IMG/VR virus record: IMGVR_UViG_3300026078_000017 | Coordinates: 256,480 to 320,479 of that record | DNA: 64,000 bases | Strand: one strand, 5' to 3' | Shown: in pieces, positions 177 through 45,089 of the stretch | Layout of the letters: each line of letters begins with the position of its first letter | How positions within the stretch are numbered: the stretch's first letter is position 1 | Notes under the pieces: generated by a model | What the model saw: only the letters and a program-made list of their open reading frames with translations | Databases searched by the model: none | Told to the model about the DNA's origin: nothing | Position numbers and translations under genes: made by a program

Positions 177-248
177 TGGGCCATCGGGGTAACGATCCCC
201 GTTCGTCGGATTAAAAGTCCGATGCTTCACCATTAAAGCTTATAGCCC
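177..248 (-). tRNA. tRNA-Lys(UUU), atypical A8/U14 and A54/U58
   Basis: cloverleaf: GGGCTAT/ATGGCCC, GCTT/AAGC, TCGGA-CTTTTAA-TCCGA, CGGGG-ATCGTTA-CCCCG. Confidence 0.9.
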
Positions 249-586
249 TAAATCACCAAAACACCAGCATGAATCTCACCGTGACAATTAGAGCATACCA
301 AAACGCACTTGTCAAGCTCTTCTTTTACTCGTTTCCACGACAGAGCCCAATTGCCGCTTATTTGAAATTCCTTGGTTGAGGGATCGAGATGATGAAAATG
401 TAATGACTGTTTACATTTACTATACCCGCAAACAATACATGAATCACCTTTGTAAGCGAAGCACTGTCGTGCTCTTTCTTTACGCCTGGCGTTGACAAGA
501 CAGGTATTACACTGCGTTTTGGTATGGCCTGCTTTTTTACTATAGCTATATGTGCGAGTGCATTGTGAACATTGATTCATGTTCAC
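248..586 (-). CDS. HNH endonuclease (zinc-finger type)
   Basis: CxxC pairs, LHFHHLDP...CVLVCSNCHGEIH. Confidence 0.9.
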   Translation of the reverse strand: MNMNQCSQCTRTYSYSKKAGHTKTQCNTCLVNARRKERARQCFAYKGDSCIVCGYSKCKQSLHFHHLDPSTKEFQISGNWALSWKRVKEELDKCVLVCSNCHGEIHAGVLVI

Positions 587-610
587 AATTTAGATGAAGG
601 CTAGAGCAAT

Positions 611-640
611 GTCTCACTCTGCCAACTGAGCTAACGCCTC
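611..640 (-). pseudogene. isolated 5' half of a tRNA
   Basis: GAGGCGT-TA-GCTC-AGTTGGCA-GAGT-G: acceptor 5' strand plus D arm; no matching 3' half seen. Confidence 0.7.
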
Positions 641-663: not shown

Positions 664-760
664 TGGCAGTTTTGATTACCCAGGTACTGCCAGACCTTTT
701 TGACAAAGTGGCTCACAGGGGACACATTCCCACGACAAGTTATGTTGTCGTCCACCCGTC
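664..760 (-). ncRNA. putative structured ncRNA (3-way junction plus hairpin)
   Basis: GACGGGTGG/CCACTTTGTC, ACGACAA/TTGTCGT, GGGA/TCCC, TGGCAGT/ACTGCCA; promoter TTGCTT(793-788)-16-TAAAGT(771-766). Confidence 0.55.
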
Positions 761-781
761 CATCTACTTTAGCAGAAAGAA

Positions 782-841
782 GTGATGAAGCAAGTAGGAA
801 GGGACGCAGCCTGGTGCTTGCCAACCTACTCGCCTCATCAC
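782..841 (-). ncRNA. putative ncRNA, 17-bp closing stem
   Basis: GTGATGAGGCGAGTAGG/CCTACTTGCTTCATCAC; promoter TTGACC(876-871)-16-TAAAGT(854-849). Confidence 0.6.
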
Positions 842-955
842 AAAGAACACTTTATCACAAAACCCTAAAGGGTCAAGAGAAAAGATTGGCTGTTTATCCT
901 CCCCGCAGCCAAGGATCACGGGACACTTTCGTATCAACCGTGAGGAGTCTTTGTG

Positions 956-1141
956 TCAGATCGACTCGATGAAAAGCTCGATCTGATTCTGTTGTCCGGG
1001 CGTTGCCCCTGGAACTTCTGGCATCACACGACCATGCGTGTGATGCTCGCATGCTGCCGCAACCCATGCGCGACGTTCTGCGGTGTTCGGAATGAGACTG
1101 CGAAGGAAGGTCAGACCGGGGTGAACCGTTTCGTTTTCCAT
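956..1141 (-). CDS. hypothetical protein (leaderless)
   Basis: ATG 6 nt after TTGACA-16-TAGGAT. Confidence 0.6.
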   Translation of the reverse strand: MENETVHPGLTFLRSLIPNTAERRAWVAAACEHHTHGRVMPEVPGATPGQQNQIELFIESI

Positions 1142-1185
1142 TTGAATATCCTAGCAGGCTGAAGGATTTTGTCAAGAAGATTTGT

Positions 1186-1312
1186 TGTTGTTGGCTTGAA
1201 CCGGCGCACACAAGGCAAGACAAGAGTTTCACGTGTCACTCGCTCCCACGAGTAAAAACGCTAGGCTTCTGTCAGGGGAGATCCCCATATGCGCCCATTC
1301 AAACCAACAACA
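1186..1312 (-). ncRNA. putative multi-branched ncRNA
   Basis: long interrupted closing stem TGTTGTTGGTTTGAA..GGCGCA/TGCGCC..TTCAAGCCAACAACA, inner hairpins; promoter TTGACA(1346-1341)-16-TAAAGT(1324-1319). Confidence 0.7.
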
Positions 1313-1350
1313 CTCTAGACTTTAGCACCAACTTAGTTTCTGTCAAGACC

Positions 1351-1473
1351 TTTGTGACCTTACAACCCCGATTTATTCCTCGCACCCAAACACATTAAAG
1401 GCATTTGACATATTCGTCTGTCATAGCCCAACGTGTTGTCGGGACCATACGAGGCAGAATCTCAGGTCACAAA
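1351..1473 (-). ncRNA. putative multi-branched ncRNA with possible pseudoknot
   Basis: TTTGTGACCT/AGGTCACAAA, CCTCGTAT/GTGCGAGG, CCCGAC/GTTGGG, TGACA/TGTCA; promoter TTGCAT(1505-1500)-16-TATGCT(1483-1478). Confidence 0.7.
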
Positions 1474-1497
1474 AAGAAGCATAGCAGAGTTTGAGGC

Positions 1498-1914
1498 TTA
1501 TGCAACGTCTCTTTGAAAATCTGTCGAGCTTGCCTCAAGCATGCTAGGAATATTCAGGTGGACATTGTGCGGGAATCTGATACCAAGACGACCCGTAACC
1601 GGACAAGGGAAGATAATCCCAGATTGCCACATCACGAGCATTTCTTCAAGAAGTTCTGTCAGAATGGCACTGGACGCTTTTCGCATGCCAAACTTGAGTG
1701 GACACCTTGACACAATATCCGCGATGATCGGGTCAAAGTGCCATTTCGCGACAGTGGGAGAAATCCAGTCGTCAGTTTCGTACTCGACTTCAGTGGACCT
1801 GTCGCCTTTCAGTCTCACGACAAAATGGACCAAATGACCATAAAGTCGGATACAGGGACGCACAGTAACATCAGACTCACACAGGGATTCAGAGAGAGAC
1901 AGGAAAGTATTCAT
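1498..1914 (-). CDS. hypothetical protein
   Basis: 138-aa ORF, GGAG RBS. Confidence 0.65.
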   Translation of the reverse strand: MNTFLSLSESLCESDVTVRPCIRLYGHLVHFVVRLKGDRSTEVEYETDDWISPTVAKWHFDPIIADIVSRCPLKFGMRKASSAILTELLEEMLVMWQSGIIFPCPVTGRLGIRFPHNVHLNIPSMLEASSTDFQRDVA

Positions 1915-3633: not shown

Positions 3634-3666
3634 GCAAAACCCACTTGACTTTCAAGTGGGTTTTGC
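3634..3666 (-). terminator. perfect 15-bp inverted repeat: terminator-like, overlaps next promoter
   Basis: GCAAAACCCACTTGA-CTT-TCAAGTGGGTTTTGC. Confidence 0.6.
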
Positions 3667-4681: not shown

Positions 4682-5056
4682 TTACTTCTGAGATTCGTTG
4701 TAGGTTTGCCGAAGTAGGTGCTTTGCGTAATTTACACTACTCCGCAGAGAAGTTACCCACGTTGCACCGCATTTTCCTTCCATCTTGACTATGAATTCAT
4801 GGTCATCCACGATATCACGAAGGAGTTGACGCATTGTGTCAAGCTCTTTCTTGAGCTTGACGATTTCGGTTTCTTCCTGTACGACTGGAGCGGTGTATTC
4901 CACTTCGGTCATCACGATCGACAACCCTGCATCGGACGCCAGCGCCCAGAAACACCGTGCTTCATCCGAGAAAATCCACTGTTGAGCATCGGGCTCGATG
5001 AAAAACGAAGCGATCTCACGTCCAGTGGCAATGTCTTTGACAACGGCGATTTCCAT
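4682..5056 (-). CDS. hypothetical coiled-coil protein
   Basis: MEIAVVKD..., AAGGA RBS, promoter. Confidence 0.7.
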   Translation of the reverse strand: MEIAVVKDIATGREIASFFIEPDAQQWIFSDEARCFWALASDAGLSIVMTEVEYTAPVVQEETEIVKLKKELDTMRQLLRDIVDDHEFIVKMEGKCGATWVTSLRSSVNYAKHLLRQTYNESQK

Positions 5057-5124
5057 TGTGTCCGTCCTTTGAATATAAAGAAAGCTTATCACGATTTTTC
5101 TGTCGTGCAAGCTTTCTTTTTGTA

Positions 5125-5215
5125 TGGTTGATTTCTGGAATCGAACCAGATCCGTTCCTGCGGTATGCCGGAACATGCTCCCTCTAGGACTTCCGCCCCT
5201 TACAACAAATCAACC
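5125..5215 (-). ncRNA. aberrant tRNA-like RNA
   Basis: GGTTGATT/AATCAACC-A, T arm TCTGG-TTCGATT-CCAGA; D region carries extra GNRA hairpin; anticodon loop 11 nt. Confidence 0.75.
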
Positions 5216-5232
5216 GTGACCCTAGGAACCTC

Positions 5233-5490
5233 TCAGAACGACTTTTCGATCGTCCAACCTGCCGACTTGAGGGTGATCTCGAAAGCCCGCAGAATCGAAT
5301 TCTGGTGGCGCGTGGTGGTACGCGAGCGCGTCTGACCAAAGAACCGAATCGACTTCTTGACACGATCGACGATCGCGATGTTCATGTCGTAGGAGTGAAC
5401 GTGATCGCCCTTCATCGTCAGTGCGCCACTGACGCAACCAAGGCCAGTGTTGCAGAAATCGACGAATTCGGAGTCGCGATACTTTGCCAT
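5233..5490 (-). CDS. hypothetical protein (GC-rich codons)
   Basis: MAKYRDSEF...SRTTTRHQN; AAAGAGGATATC leader. Confidence 0.8.
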   Translation of the reverse strand: MAKYRDSEFVDFCNTGLGCVSGALTMKGDHVHSYDMNIAIVDRVKKSIRFFGQTRSRTTTRHQNSILRAFEITLKSAGWTIEKSF

Positions 5491-7223: not shown

Positions 7224-7488
7224 TTGCGGGGTTTTAGGTTTCTGCTATTATGATCTTACTCCAGAAGGAGGGGAGAATGAGGGATGGGAATTTTCAGGTT
7301 GGCACGGTTAGTGCTATCGCAATCCCTAGACCATCGTACCAAACTCACTTGGCATAAAACTTTCCCAAAAAGATTTCTTGCTTCTGACGTCAAGCCTGCT
7401 AAAGTGTTGATTGTTGAAGGCGAGACGAAAGAGACGAGAAAAGAGACTCAAAAAAATCTCTTGACGAAGTTTCCGAGTCTGCTAAAGT
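7224..7488 (+). promoter_or_regulatory. stack of tandem promoters at strand-divergence point
   Basis: TTGCGG-16-TATTAT (7224), TTGCTT-16-TAAAGT (7378), TTGACG-16-TAAAGT (7461), all with TGC before -10. Confidence 0.75.
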
Positions 7489-8819: not shown

Positions 8820-9251
8820 ATGAACATGAATGACTATACCTGGTTCGCTCAGATTCTGGTCGATGCGGATTACACGCCCCGCAAGTATTCTGGTCGTTTC
8901 ATGTATGGAAAGCAGTGTCTTTCCATTCACCTCGATCGCGAGGATTCTCAGGCCCGGACCATCGGTCTGATTCTTGCGAACATGTCGATGGACAACAAGC
9001 ATCCGGCACGGTTCAAGCAGGATGTGCTTGATCTTTCGGAGATCTTGCAGGATGCTCGTGAGGATTCCATGGGCCTTGGAAGCGTCCTGTACTTCCCCAA
9101 GGTCACGTGGAAGGATTCCTACGAGAATCCCACGGGCGAGGAAGAGGATTTCGACGAGGAAGACGAACAGAAGGAATGGGAAGACGAGCGTACCACGAAC
9201 GCTCTTGAGTTGACCTGTTCCGATTCTGAGGAGATTTCTCCTAAGGGTTGA
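8820..9251 (+). CDS. phage hypothetical protein, acidic tail
   Basis: YSGRFMYGKQC...DSMGLGSVLYFP. Confidence 0.8.
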   Translation: MNMNDYTWFAQILVDADYTPRKYSGRFMYGKQCLSIHLDREDSQARTIGLILANMSMDNKHPARFKQDVLDLSEILQDAREDSMGLGSVLYFPKVTWKDSYENPTGEEEDFDEEDEQKEWEDERTTNALELTCSDSEEISPKG

Positions 9252-9335
9252 CACCGGGGGTAGCTCCTGCTACCATTTCCTCTGTCCGTTTTGACATGTT
9301 TTTGAACATGTTTTGATGGACGGAGGAAAACTGCT

Positions 9336-9596
9336 TTGAAGCCCACAGACATTTATACCAACGACTCGGGTAAGTCTTACATCATCACGTGGGTAAGCCC
9401 TGTCGAAAGTCTTATTTCTGCGGAGCCTGTGAGGGCTTTCCAGGGCATTTCTCTACCCCCCCACCTCCTAGCTCCTTCTAGGTTCCGCAGGATTTTCTGT
9501 GCGATTCTCGTGGCGCACTACTGGTTAGTTCGTGGAGTCAAACGCCTTTATTGGGAGTTGATTTACCAGCCAGGGGTTTGGAAGAAACGTGGTTGA
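9336..9596 (+). CDS. hypothetical protein
   Basis: GGAGG RBS. Confidence 0.6.
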   Translation: MKPTDIYTNDSGKSYIITWVSPVESLISAEPVRAFQGISLPPHLLAPSRFRRIFCAILVAHYWLVRGVKRLYWELIYQPGVWKKRG

Positions 9597-15345: not shown

Positions 15346-15349
15346 ATGG

Positions 15350-15384
15350 AAAAGGATGGAACCCCATTTCGGTGTTCCACCCTT
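15350..15384 (-). terminator. rho-independent terminator
   Basis: AAGGGTGGAAC/GTTCCATCCTT plus T-tract. Confidence 0.8.
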
Positions 15385-15486
15385 CTCAGCAGATTATTGC
15401 GACTTTCGACATTGCTGGCACTTGTCTAAAGCCTAACTGACTTCGGTCCAGCCCCGGTCAGCGTAACAGCCTCGCTTATCTATGAG
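15385..15486 (-). ncRNA. structured RNA domain with candidate kissing loops
   Basis: CTCA/TGAG, AGAT/ATCT, GCGA/TCGC, GCTGAC/GTCAGT, GACA/TGTC; loops GCTGG and CCAGC complementary. Confidence 0.55.
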
Positions 15487-15550
15487 CACAGTTGTTTCTC
15501 TATTATCTTAATTAGAGGGTTGCTAGTTTATTGGTTTGAGTGAGGGAACT

Positions 15551-15707
15551 ATGTTCCTGAGCTGAATGCACCGAGCCTGCTCGTAATCGACCCTACTTGC
15601 CTAAAATTAGGGTGGCTTTCATGCCGACTACCAAGGACTTTATGTGCGCACATACACCTAGGGAGCGTCCTCCAAGGTCAGGTTAGGTGCATTCAACTCA
15701 GGAACAT
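15551..15707 (-). ncRNA. multi-branched ncRNA with 22-bp closing stem
   Basis: ATGTTCCTGAGTTGAATGCACC/GGTGCATTCAGCTCAGGAACAT plus four inner helices; promoter TTGACA(15744-15739)-16-TACAGT(15722-15717). Confidence 0.8.
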
Positions 15708-15740
15708 CATGAACTTACTGTAGCAAGACTTTTGGAAGTG

Positions 15741-16064
15741 TCAAGCTGTTTCCTGCTCGGTCTGCTTGAGCCAGAGACACGAGTTTGCGTCCACACCCTT
15801 GACGATGAACGTCACGTGATCGACGGAGCACTCACGCGGATACATGGTCACATCCGTAGGCTGGATGTTGAAGTGTGCGGCAACAACCGGAATCAGACGA
15901 CTCACCACCTTGCGATAGGCCGTAGACTGACCAATATTTGCCATCTCCGCGTACTGGTCGCCCGTAAGAGCCACACGAACACGACCATTCTTGCGCGGTC
16001 GACCCTTCATGCCGGTCTGCGAGGGAAGCGAAGTGGTCTGCTCAAGAGAAAGAAGCGTCGTCAT
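15741..16064 (-). CDS. hypothetical protein with AT-hook-like KGRPRK
   Basis: GC-rich codons; resembles ORF at 52281. Confidence 0.8.
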   Translation of the reverse strand: MTTLLSLEQTTSLPSQTGMKGRPRKNGRVRVALTGDQYAEMANIGQSTAYRKVVSRLIPVVAAHFNIQPTDVTMYPRECSVDHVTFIVKGVDANSCLWLKQTEQETA

Positions 16065-43312: not shown

Positions 43313-43963
43313 ATGTTTTGGATTTACGCGCTTCTTGATGAAAAAGGTTTTCCTAGATATGTTGGAAAAACCTATGACTTGAAAGAACGACTGAGAAATC
43401 ATCTCAAAGAGAAAGGTCGTTGTCATCGAATCTGTTGGCTTAAATCTATGAAATCTAAGGGACTCAATCCCACATTGATTGCATTGGATTCTAAGCCAAC
43501 AGAGCAAGAAGCTTTGGATGAAGAAGTTTTTTTGATATCTTATTTTCGTTATTTGGGTGCTGATTTAACCAACGGAACAGATGGTGGTGAAGGAATCTCT
43601 GGACACAAACATTCCTTAGAAACAAGAAACAAAATGTCCAAAAGTCGGATAGGACATATAACTTCACCTGAAACTCGACGTAAGTTGTCTGAATCAAACA
43701 AAGGTAAACCACATAAAGGTGGATGGCATCATAATGAAACAAGTAAGAAAAAAATAACAGGTAGAAAACCAAGGCAAATTCAAGACTCGCATGGAAAAGT
43801 CTTTGCGTCTGTTCGTGAAGCTGCTAAAGTGTTTGGTGTAAGCATCGATCAAATCAAATATGCCCTTCAAAAGGGCACTCCCACCCACAAAGTACCAAGG
43901 TTACATTATGTTGAAGGTTCAAGAATATCTACTGACGCACACATTGAACGATTTAGCTCGTGA
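43313..43963 (+). CDS. GIY-YIG homing endonuclease with NUMOD3 repeats
   Basis: IYAL...RYVGKT, LTNGTDGGEG, HSLETRNKMS, SPETRRKLS. Confidence 0.9.
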   Translation: MFWIYALLDEKGFPRYVGKTYDLKERLRNHLKEKGRCHRICWLKSMKSKGLNPTLIALDSKPTEQEALDEEVFLISYFRYLGADLTNGTDGGEGISGHKHSLETRNKMSKSRIGHITSPETRRKLSESNKGKPHKGGWHHNETSKKKITGRKPRQIQDSHGKVFASVREAAKVFGVSIDQIKYALQKGTPTHKVPRLHYVEGSRISTDAHIERFSS

Positions 43964-45089
43964 ACATGGCGTCTATTCTCGCTTCAGCACGAAAAATCCT
44001 TTGAAGTGGTCTCTAAATTACGACCAGATCGAAGCGAAGGATGCAGATCCGATCGCTCAGGAGTGTCGTGGTCTGGTTCTTGCGACGGAAGAGCCGTTGG
44101 CAGACATGGATCCGACGCTTGGCGCAATGGGCGTTACGGTTGGCGAGACGAAGATTCGTGGTCTTCCCATGGGACGGTTTTTCAACTACGGCCAGGGCTC
44201 TGCCGCTACGGTTGACCTGGATTCGCCTGACACGCGCTTCTGTGAGAAGCTCGACGGAACCCTGTGCATCATGTATTGGGATCGTCACCTTGGAGAGTGG
44301 TCCATTGCCACGCGATCTGTTCCAGACGCTGACCTTCCTATGGATGGTTTTGGCAATCAGACGTTCACGGATCTCTTCTGGAAGGCTTTTAAGGCTTCTG
44401 GTGGAATGATTTCGCAGTTGGACTATGCACGTGGGTGGCATACCTTCTGTTTCGAGCTTTGCACGCCCGATAACCAGATTGTGGTCAAGTACCCGGACTA
44501 CAAGGTTTATCTCCTGGCTGCTCGTGAGAACGAGACCGGAATCAACATGGATCCTCAGCCTTGGGCGGTCCAGATGTCGGTGGAGTGTGCTCCGACGTAT
44601 CGTTTCGGCTCCACGGACGAAATGCTGAATTTCGTTTCCTCGCGAAATCCCTTGGCTCACGAGGGAATCGTCGTTGTTGACAAGGACTTCAATCGAGTCA
44701 AGGTCAAGAATGCGGGATATCTCGCTTACAACAAGATCAAGGACTCTGTTGCAAAGTCTCCTCGTGCGGTAATGGAGATCGTTCTTCTTGGCAAGGAAGA
44801 CGACGTTATGCCGCTCGTTCCCGAGCATGTGCAGAAGGTCATCCTTGACACCAAGGATCGCCTGGCGGCATTTTTGCGAGTCACGGACGAGGAATACACG
44901 GCTTGCTATCACACGGACCGTAAGACGTTTGCTCTTGCCATTCAGGCGGGTTCTGGTAACATGGGACCACAGATGGCACGATGGTCGGGAAAGTGTGCTT
45001 CTACCAAGGACTGGATCTTCTCTCAGCGGAAGGATGGAAATTGGTCAGATGGGTTCCTTGACTCGCTTATGCGTATGTGTAAGGAATAA
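43908..45089 (+). CDS. RNA ligase, T4 Rnl1-like
   Basis: ECRGL, RFFN, EKLDGT, FEL, EGIVV, RVKVK. Confidence 0.9.
   Translation: MLKVQEYLLTHTLNDLAREHGVYSRFSTKNPLKWSLNYDQIEAKDADPIAQECRGLVLATEEPLADMDPTLGAMGVTVGETKIRGLPMGRFFNYGQGSAATVDLDSPDTRFCEKLDGTLCIMYWDRHLGEWSIATRSVPDADLPMDGFGNQTFTDLFWKAFKASGGMISQLDYARGWHTFCFELCTPDNQIVVKYPDYKVYLLAARENETGINMDPQPWAVQMSVECAPTYRFGSTDEMLNFVSSRNPLAHEGIVVVDKDFNRVKVKNAGYLAYNKIKDSVAKSPRAVMEIVLLGKEDDVMPLVPEHVQKVILDTKDRLAAFLRVTDEEYTACYHTDRKTFALAIQAGSGNMGPQMARWSGKCASTKDWIFSQRKDGNWSDGFLDSLMRMCKE

What the first reader, a model, noticed from the sequence alone, without database searches (positions are those of the whole stretch)
664..1505. Head-to-tail array of promoter-driven structured ncRNAs
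Seen: four non-coding units (664-760, 782-841, 1186-1312, 1351-1473) each begin about 5-7 nt after their own TTG[A/C]NN-16-TAnnnT promoter. In each, the 5' end starts a long closing helix that encloses further hairpins or a loop. Stem mismatches read as G-U pairs on the minus strand, which agrees with promoter direction. Three units end at or overlap the -35 box of the next cassette. Unit 1351-1473 can form a pseudoknot (loop AACAC with GTGTT). Inference: this phage uses the same cassette format for small structured RNAs as for small proteins. They could be a library of RNA decoys or aptamers against host RNA-sensing defence, RNA polymerase or RNA-binding proteins. I recognise no known family.
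Basis: partly seen in the sequence, partly recalled or inferred. Interest (0 to 1): 0.85.

Follow-up and report, generated by a model that had tools for sequence, protein, structure and literature searches.

The report
Promoter-driven structured RNAs in a jumbo phage
A 320-kb uncultured phage carries, next to its only tRNA gene, several short non-coding units that each have their own early promoter and fold into very stable RNA shapes; two keep their shape in the only known relatives, so they are real RNA elements of unknown function, not chance.

Summary
All four units sit 5-7 nt after a promoter of a motif found 46 times in the window against 2.7 expected. Units 2, 3 and 4 fold far better than shuffles (z -6.9, -7.5, -6.0). 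Units 2 and 3 are the most stable windows of their length in the whole 64 kb. Pairing is strand-specific: 31 G-U pairs against 1 A-C mismatch. No unit has a credible ORF.

Only two related lineages exist in the collections searched.
- Unit 3 is syntenic in one of them, at 65% identity, with 7 double compensatory changes and conserved loops.
- Unit 1 folds weakly but keeps four helices through 13 double changes. It is the 5' leader of an HNH-tRNA-Lys transcript.
- Unit 4 has no demonstrable homologue. A protein gene fills its slot in the relative.
- Unit 2 is a lone hairpin with a U-rich tail, and may be a terminator or an empty cassette.

There is no Rfam match. The units are therefore real RNA-level elements, but they differ in kind. 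The "decoy/aptamer library" idea is untested, and the claimed pseudoknot is an ordinary nested helix. I rate this a new variant of a known kind (phage-encoded small RNAs), of moderate interest.

The parts
1478..1505 (-). Promoter of unit 4 (TTGCAT, 16-nt spacer, TGC-TATGCT). It overlaps the stop codon of the 138-aa ORF 1498-1914.
   Evidence: Motif match; sequence.
1351..1473 (-). Unit 4: a 123-nt non-coding RNA. A 9-bp closing helix encloses a chain of six further helices.
   Evidence: MFE -51.4, z -6.0, against -34.4 on the plus strand. 8 G-U pairs and 0 A-C. Top 0.2% of windows. No ORF from the start site. No significant homologue. A 90-aa ORF fills the slot in L003.
1319..1346 (-). Promoter of unit 3 (TTGACA, 16-nt spacer, TGC-TAAAGT).
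   Evidence: The promoter is conserved in L003.
1186..1313 (-). Unit 3: a rod-like RNA of about 127 nt. It has a terminal helix of 16+6 bp with a G/G mismatch, inner helices P3-P5, a conserved apical loop UGGGAG and a conserved internal loop CUCCCCUG.
   Evidence: MFE -65.9, z -7.5. Most stable 127-nt window in 64 kb. Syntenic homologue at L003:3042-3168, z -6.0. 7 double compensatory and 5 one-sided changes, permutation p 3e-4. Substitution simulations.
1148..1175 (-). Promoter of the leaderless 61-aa ORF. It separates unit 3 from the ORF.
956..1141 (-). 61-aa ORFan. It is leaderless (ATG 7 nt after the -10) and conserved as a protein in L003 (59% identity).
886..912 (-). Hairpin after the 61-aa ORF. 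The 7-bp stem covaries (2 double changes) and the 13-nt loop YGGGGNGGAUAAA is nearly invariant. A U-rich tail follows in the window.
   Evidence: Sequence comparison with L003:3528-3556. Substitution simulation z -4.0, 0.4%.
849..876 (-). Promoter of unit 2 (TTGACC, 16-nt spacer, TGA-TAAAGT).
782..841 (-). Unit 2: a 60-nt hairpin with a 17-bp stem plus inner pairs, followed by UUCUUUCU. Its 3' arm holds the -35 of the next promoter.
   Evidence: MFE -35.3, z -6.9. Most stable 60-nt window in 64 kb. No homologue. A 25-codon ORF starts at the predicted start site, but it lies inside the helix.
766..793 (-). Promoter of unit 1 and of the HNH-tRNA-Lys transcript.
   Evidence: The equivalent promoter is in L003.
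664..760 (-). Unit 1: the structured 5' leader. A three-way junction (Pa, Pb, HP1 with conserved loop CAUAAC, HP2) is followed by HP3, whose A-rich loop is conserved.
   Evidence: Weak by energy, z -1.55. The centroid architecture is the same in the window and in L003. 13 double compensatory changes in 4 helices, permutation p about 1e-5.
603..623 (-). A 21-nt stretch identical in the window and L003. It forms a hairpin just upstream of the HNH start codon.
   Evidence: Alignment A4.
248..580 (-). HNH endonuclease ORF. It is driven by the unit 1 promoter and abuts the tRNA.
   Evidence: phrog_2255, E 8.6e-26.
177..248 (-). tRNA-Lys (UUU), the only tRNA in the window.
   Evidence: ARAGORN; Rfam 49.9 bits.
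15548..15744 (-). A second locus in the same format: promoter 15717-15744, then a 164-nt RNA whose 22-bp closing helix encloses a branched core.
   Evidence: MFE -72.7, z -6.4.
15346..15547 (-). Non-coding tail of that transcript. The core 15405-15500 is homologous to L003:3610-3700, with a covarying stem. An intrinsic terminator lies at about 15351-15385.

Best explanation
The region is a run of early, host-sigma70-type transcription units in the small-gene region of an uncultured 320-kb phage. Several of these units make structured non-coding RNA instead of a small protein.

Shown:
- Each unit has its own promoter, and the predicted start site lies at the base of the fold.
- The folds are extreme and strand-specific.
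- No unit is credibly coding.
- Structure is conserved through compensatory change for units 1 and 3.

Inferred:
- Unit 3, and by format unit 4 and the unit at 15548-15711, are stand-alone small RNAs. Their paired 5' and 3' ends would protect them from exonucleases, or mark them for excision from read-through transcripts by a double-strand-specific RNase.
- They would act in trans through the conserved terminal helix and the conserved loops (UGGGAG, CUCCCCUG), by binding a protein or an RNA partner.
- Unit 1 is a cis leader of the HNH-tRNA-Lys transcript.
- Unit 2 is a minimal hairpin RNA, or a terminator or insulator.

The units are not paralogues of each other. They swap with protein ORFan cassettes between relatives.
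For: - Promoter motif: 46 found against 2.7 expected.
- Leaderless cassettes fix the start site 7 nt after the -10.
- z-scores from -6.0 to -7.5, with weaker folds on the other strand.
- 31 G-U pairs against 1 A-C.
- Units 3 and 2 rank first among about 18,200 windows.
- The unit 3 homologue is syntenic and has its own promoter. It has 7 double and 5 single compatible changes and 3 broken pairs at helix ends, p 3e-4.
- Placing the same 42 substitutions at random gives -32 +/- 3.8 against the real -57.2, 0 of 1000. Permuting the new bases at the same sites gives -49 +/- 4.5 against -59.9, 1.4%.
- The 27 nt of unit 3's outer helix arms are identical although the flanks are about 70-77% identical.
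- Unit 1 has 13 double changes in 4 helices, and independent folds give the same architecture.
- The same format recurs at 15548-15744.
Against: - There are no expression data.
- Only two independent lineages exist, so covariation statistics are weak. The tool's own count, on a model-fitted and partly misregistered alignment, gives 5 double changes against 2.5 +/- 1.2 in shuffles, 24 of 500.
- I chose the helices of unit 1 by eye in both sequences.
- Units 3 and 4 have no terminator. Their promoters would read into the next cassette, so they may never exist as discrete RNAs.
- Units 2 and 4 have no homologue.
- A similar 5'-terminal hairpin at 9283-9323 precedes an ordinary SD-led ORF. That shows such hairpins can be mere mRNA features.
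Confidence: 0.6

Rival explanations
1. The structures are cis-acting parts of early transcripts and not trans-acting RNAs. They would be 5' stabilising hairpins, terminators or insulators between cassettes, and RNase III-type processing sites. Such elements would separate read-through RNA in a system where only a 5'-terminal AUG is translated.
For: - Unit 1 is clearly a leader of HNH-tRNA-Lys.
- Unit 2 is followed by UUCUUUCU and overlaps the next -35.
- The hairpin at 9283-9323 sits at the 5' end of a normal mRNA.
- Units 3 and 4 have no terminator.
- Closing helices of 20 bp or more fit RNase III substrates (established knowledge).
Against: - A consensus promoter sits directly in front of each structure, and a second promoter directly behind it. 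That is wasteful for a mere insulator, yet the arrangement is conserved in L003.
- The phage's clear terminators are short GC stems followed by T5-6, unlike units 3 and 4.
- The loops are conserved and the terminal helix is invariant in sequence. That points to specific recognition.
Confidence: 0.27
2. The units, unit 2 above all, are empty cassettes. They would be scars left when a small ORF was lost by recombination between promoter/stem-loop elements, as with PeSLs in T4-type phages.
For: - Cassette content differs between relatives: unit 4 against a 90-aa ORF, and extra units in L003.
- The order promoter, hairpin, promoter at 766-876 looks like two adjacent PeSL-like elements (PMC2839356).
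- Tandem promoters with only 49 nt between them lie at 7378-7488.
Against: - Scars would not keep structure through 7 to 13 compensatory changes, nor rank first in stability genome-wide.
- Regions upstream of promoters are not generally structured: -13.8 against -13.7 kcal/mol.
- The stem-loops share no sequence.
Confidence: 0.08
3. A unit encodes a very small leaderless peptide. The candidates are the 25 codons from GTG 841 in unit 2 and the 33 codons from GTG 755 in unit 1.
For: Leaderless translation is common here, and both ORFs begin 1-4 nt from the predicted start site.
Against: - In unit 2 the start codon is buried in a 17-bp helix.
- In unit 1 the conserved nucleotides fall in different frames in L003, and the frames end at different places.
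- Units 3 and 4 hit a stop within 3-5 codons.
Confidence: 0.03
4. The units are DNA-level elements: MITE-like inverted repeats, cruciforms, an origin or a recombination site.
For: Long inverted repeats of 23-29 bp flank 80-100 bp.
Against: - The G-U against A-C asymmetry is strand-specific, and folds on the transcribed strand are more stable.
- Each unit is single-copy, with no paralogue by covariance model.
- The inner helices covary.
Confidence: 0.02

Closest known systems
T4 RNAC and RNAD (species 1 and 2 stable RNAs in the tRNA gene cluster)
   Same: They are small stable non-coding RNAs encoded beside phage tRNA genes in a large virulent phage. Their function is still unknown (PMC9697503).
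   Different: - The T4 RNAs are classed as late and are matured from the tRNA precursor (the maturation is from my own knowledge).
- Here each unit has its own early-type promoter.
- I did not compare the sequences.
PeSL cassettes of T4-type phages (promoter-early stem-loop)
   Same: - The promoters are strong and sigma70-like, one per small ORFan.
- Stem-loops lie next to promoters.
- Cassettes are swapped or lost between relatives (PMC2839356, PMC4122927).
   Different: - PeSL stem-loops are short terminators upstream of the promoter, and the whole motif of about 100 bp is repeated.
- Here the structures lie downstream of a promoter, are 60-160 nt long, are unrelated to each other in sequence and are conserved by compensatory change.
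- Regions upstream of promoters are not generally structured.
RNA anti-CRISPRs (Racrs; solitary repeat units)
   Same: They are short non-coding RNAs placed immediately downstream of their own promoter in phage genomes, and they act as protein decoys (PMC10651486).
   Different: - Racrs are defined by mimicry of a host CRISPR repeat.
- The host here is unknown, so no repeat can be compared.
- Units 3 and 4 are much longer and more complex than a repeat.
Adenovirus VA RNA, 6S RNA and Y RNAs (closed-end decoy RNAs)
   Same: The 5' and 3' ends pair in a long terminal stem that encloses a central domain. Such RNAs act by binding a protein. This comparison rests on my own knowledge.
   Different: There is no sequence or model match: Rfam 6S, Y_RNA and YrlA give no hit even at E up to 10. 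The resemblance is in architecture only.

Membership tests
Any Rfam 15 family (tRNA, 6S, Y RNA, pRNA, riboswitches, ribozymes, T-box and others) | A covariance-model score at or above the gathering threshold. | tested here: not met
   The only hit in the window is tRNA-Lys at 177-248. At E up to 10 over 1-2500 there is one chance hit on the wrong strand, Mu-gpT-DE at 19.6 bits against a threshold of 49. The relatives give tRNAs only.
PeSL (T4-type promoter-early stem-loop) | A sigma70-like early promoter in front of each small ORFan. | tested here: met
   46 plus 16 motif matches against about 2.7 expected for each.
PeSL (T4-type promoter-early stem-loop) | A terminator stem-loop immediately upstream of the promoter, as a general feature. 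| tested here: not met
   The mean MFE of the 69 nt upstream of 57 promoters is -13.8, against -13.7 for background. Only a few promoters have a terminator there.
PeSL (T4-type promoter-early stem-loop) | A composite motif of about 100 bp that is repeated and similar in sequence between copies. | tested here: not met
   The units share no sequence. The covariance model of unit 3 finds no paralogue in the window or in the loci.
PeSL (T4-type promoter-early stem-loop) | Cassette gains, losses and swaps between relatives at these motifs. | tested here: met
   The unit 4 slot holds a 90-aa ORF in L003. L003 also has extra units and a second HNH-tRNA pair.
Intrinsic terminator | A GC-rich stem directly followed by a run of U. 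| tested here: inconclusive
   The scan finds none at the unit ends. Unit 2 is followed by UUCUUUCU. Units 3 and 4 have no U run.
Racr (RNA anti-CRISPR) | Similarity to a CRISPR repeat of the host. | not testable with these tools
   The host is unknown. The closest cultured phages share 32% protein identity or less.
Racr (RNA anti-CRISPR) | A non-coding RNA immediately downstream of its own promoter. | tested here: met
T4 RNAC/RNAD-type stable RNAs | Encoded within or beside the phage tRNA cluster and matured from the tRNA precursor. | tested here: inconclusive
   The units lie 420-1300 nt upstream of the sole tRNA, on the same strand. Only unit 1 shares its transcript. Processing cannot be tested.
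Conserved structured RNA (general criterion) | Base pairs maintained by compensatory substitutions in homologues. | tested here: met
   Unit 3: 7 double changes and the simulations. Unit 1: 13 double changes. The evidence rests on two lineages, and the tool count on a fitted alignment is weaker. Units 2 and 4 could not be tested, because they have no homologue.

The most novel reading that the evidence does not exclude
Unit 3, unit 4 and the unit at 15548-15711 are a new class of early phage RNAs with closed ends, analogous to VA RNA. They would be made in bulk straight after infection to occupy a host protein that binds double-stranded or structured RNA, such as RNase III, an RNA-sensing cyclase of CBASS type, or another immune sensor. 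They would evolve as swappable cassettes alongside protein anti-defence ORFans.
Probability: 0.12. Interest if true: 0.85.

Novelty: new variant of a known kind. Interest (0 to 1): 0.58.

Why it matters
Phage small RNAs are much less well catalogued than phage small proteins. Here non-coding RNAs fill the same promoter-bounded slots as ORFan genes in a leaderless early region, and they swap with those genes between relatives. If the RNAs act in trans, gene-centred annotation of phage accessory and anti-defence regions is missing a class of effectors. Unit 3 gives a concrete subject for experiment: it is small, extremely stable, and has conserved loops and an invariant terminal helix.

Tried and rejected
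- Stop-codon recoding. It could have explained the lack of long ORFs, but no code gives a clear gain.
- Rfam at gathering and at permissive thresholds. Nothing matched.
- GenBank phages by blastn. Only HNH and tRNA fragments matched.
- IMG/VR by protein and by three DNA patterns. Only the source contig was found.
- JGI metagenomes by a unit 3 pattern. The scan found the source, the L003 contig and two chance matches.
- GTDB genomes by a looser pattern. It gave 108 chance hits, and none scores with the unit 3 covariance model.
- Protein routes to more relatives. The profile of the 138-aa family found one more homologue (P0005), in an unrelated small phage with no units. The profile of the 61-aa ORF found only variants of the L003 clade.
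- L007 as a unit 4 homologue. The global alignment is only about 46% identical, blastn finds nothing, and the L007 tail is an open ORF. I rejected it as evidence.
- A fixed 120-nt sliding scan. It missed units 3 and 4 because their closing helices span more than 120 nt. I replaced it with scans at the exact lengths.
- A shared C-rich motif, TCCCCTG. It is not enriched over the window, 9 found against 6.6 expected. Three copies fall within 716-1958, but I noticed this after the fact.
- A T-box reading of unit 1 (GGGUGGAC, A-rich loop). The motif is absent from L003 and there is no Rfam hit, so I rejected it.

Full report
**Source and setting.** The window is the last 64 kb of IMGVR_UViG_3300026078_000017, a 320,479-bp viral contig. 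It has almost no long ORFs. Stop-codon recoding does not explain this. The larger ORFs include an Rnl1-like RNA ligase, a sigma factor, a radical SAM protein, an NAD kinase and GIY-YIG/HNH homing endonucleases. The closest cultured phages share 32% protein identity or less, so the host is unknown.

**Promoters.** The motif TTGNNN-N13-TGnTAnnnT occurs 46 times against 2.67 expected. With a spacer one base longer it occurs 16 times against 2.73 expected. The sites lie on the minus strand up to about 24 kb. Many protein cassettes are leaderless. At least eight have the ATG or GTG exactly 7 nt after the -10, and about twenty have it within -1 to +6 of that point. This fixes the likely start site, which coincides with the first paired nucleotides of each unit.

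**Folding.** On the minus strand, unit 2 (782-841) has z -6.9, unit 3 (1186-1312) has z -7.5 and unit 4 (1351-1473) has z -6.0. Unit 1 (664-760) has only z -1.55. Except for the weak unit 1, the plus strand folds less well, for example -65.9 against -51.8 kcal/mol for unit 3. The predicted helices of the units hold 31 G-U pairs and one A-C 1x1 mismatch. I also scanned every window of the same length on both strands, about 18,200 per length. None is as stable as unit 3 or unit 2, and unit 4 is in the top 0.2%.

**Coding potential.**
- Units 3 and 4 meet a stop within a few codons of the start site.
- Unit 2 has a 25-codon frame from the start site, but its start codon is buried in a 17-bp helix.
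- Unit 1 has a 33-codon frame, but in the relative the conserved bases fall in other frames.

**Relatives.** Searches by protein and by DNA pattern found only two related lineages.
- The L003 clade comes from ENA and Logan assemblies and has three near-identical variants.
- L007 is a 3.9-kb JGI contig that ends 126 nt after the neighbouring gene.
- L003 is syntenic at about 70-77% nucleotide identity.

**Unit 3 in L003.** It is present at L003:3042-3168, behind its own promoter and ahead of the promoter of the homologous leaderless 63-aa ORF. The two copies are 65% identical, and the L003 copy also folds with z -6.0. Helix by helix, 24 pairs are unchanged, 5 change on one side compatibly, 7 change on both sides and stay paired, and 3 at helix ends are broken (permutation p 3e-4).

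I ran two simulations on the substitutions:
- Placing the same 42 substitutions at random gives -32.2 +/- 3.8 kcal/mol against the real -57.2, 0 of 1000.
- Keeping the sites and permuting the new bases gives -49.2 +/- 4.5 against -59.9, 1.4%.

The tool count on a model-fitted alignment is weaker: 5 double changes against 2.5 +/- 1.2 in shuffles, and 0-2 when partners are slid. That alignment includes a reverse-strand row and a one-base misregister in the apical helix. The outer arms of the terminal helix (14 and 13 nt), the apical loop UGGGAG and the internal loop CUCCCCUG are unchanged between the two phages. GGGAG and CUCCC are complementary, so a loop-loop contact is possible. That is inference only.

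**Unit 1 in L003.** It has the same architecture in both phages: a three-way junction and a 3' hairpin. Single-sequence folds predict this independently for each. There are 13 double compensatory changes across four helices, and two loops are conserved (p about 1e-5). I picked the helices by eye, which favours the result. In both phages no promoter separates this element from an HNH endonuclease ORF that abuts tRNA-Lys(UUU). Unit 1 is therefore a 5' leader.

**Units 2 and 4.** Neither has a significant homologue. In L003 the slot of unit 4 holds a 90-aa ORF. The L007 tail is an open frame and is not demonstrably related.

**3' ends.** The phage's clear terminators are GC stems of 9-11 bp followed by T5-6. 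None follows unit 3 or unit 4. Unit 2 is followed by UUCUUUCU. Transcripts from the promoters of units 3 and 4 would therefore read into the next cassette unless they are processed. Because the downstream ORF is leaderless, such read-through RNA would probably not be translated (inference).

**The same format elsewhere.**
- Promoter 15717-15744 drives a 164-nt RNA with a 22-bp closing helix (z -6.4).
- A non-coding tail follows it. The core of that tail is homologous to a promoter-driven unit at L003:3610-3700, and the tail ends in a terminator.
- A 5'-terminal hairpin at 9283-9323 precedes an ordinary SD-led ORF. Not every such hairpin is an RNA gene.
- The covariance model of unit 3 finds no paralogue.

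**Conclusion.** It is strongest for unit 3, then unit 1. For units 2 and 4 it rests on thermodynamics alone. The units differ in kind. The closest known things are T4 RNAC/RNAD, PeSL cassettes and promoter-proximal Racr RNAs (PMC9697503, PMC2839356, PMC4122927, PMC10651486). Membership of any of these is either not met or not testable. The function remains inferred.

Noticed in passing
window-wide, e.g. ORF starts at 1141, 4643, 11061, 14173, 18437, 21903 (-) and 31112 (+): Many cassettes are leaderless: the ATG lies exactly 7 nt after the -10 hexamer. Others have ordinary SD leaders. This may be a clue to the host or to the expression strategy.
   Followed up: partly
window 177-640 (-); L003:3700-4258 and 4960-5439: HNH endonuclease ORFs abut or overlap the 5' end of tRNA genes. 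There is one pair here (Lys) and two in the relative (Glu, Lys). The 21 nt at window 603-623 are identical in both phages. Window 596-640 reads like a tRNA acceptor plus D-arm fragment, but it scores with no tRNA model.
   Followed up: partly
window 177-248 (-) and 43860-45089 (+): The only tRNA is Lys(UUU), and the window encodes an Rnl1-like RNA ligase (phrog_562, E 1.8e-39). Together they suggest a defence against anticodon nucleases.
   Followed up: no
window 15346-15744 (-): A second non-coding transcription unit of about 360 nt has a promoter, a 164-nt closed RNA, a tail conserved with L003:3610-3700 and an intrinsic terminator.
   Followed up: partly
window 9248-9336 (+): A promoter with a 17-nt spacer is followed by a 5'-terminal hairpin of about 20 bp (the 120-nt window has z -7.25). 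A GGAGGA Shine-Dalgarno site and a TTG-start 86-codon ORF come next. This is probably an mRNA-stabilising hairpin.
   Followed up: partly
window 7378-7488 (+): Two consensus promoters lie in tandem, separated by 49 nt of purine-rich, unstructured, non-coding sequence. This may be an empty cassette.
   Followed up: no
window 886-912 (-); L003:3528-3556: A hairpin after the 61-aa ORF has a covarying stem and a nearly invariant SD-like 13-nt loop, YGGGGNGGAUAAA. In L003 it sits inside a unit with its own promoter.
   Followed up: partly
window 3634-3666: A perfect 15-bp palindrome overlaps divergent promoter-like sites on both strands.
   Followed up: no
L003:2730-3002 (+): The 90-aa ORF that fills the unit 4 slot in the relative has a weak, sub-threshold match to the ribosomal L7/L12 C-terminal domain (E 1.6e-4, 22.4 bits against a cutoff of 25.9).
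   Followed up: no
Genome-contig loci L020-L022, L062, L069, L076 and others: Many Bacteroidales MAGs (Paludibacteraceae, Aphodosoma) share a 120-nt stretch bounded by the two search words. It is probably a conserved gene unrelated to the phage (covariance model scores about 16 bits).
   Followed up: no
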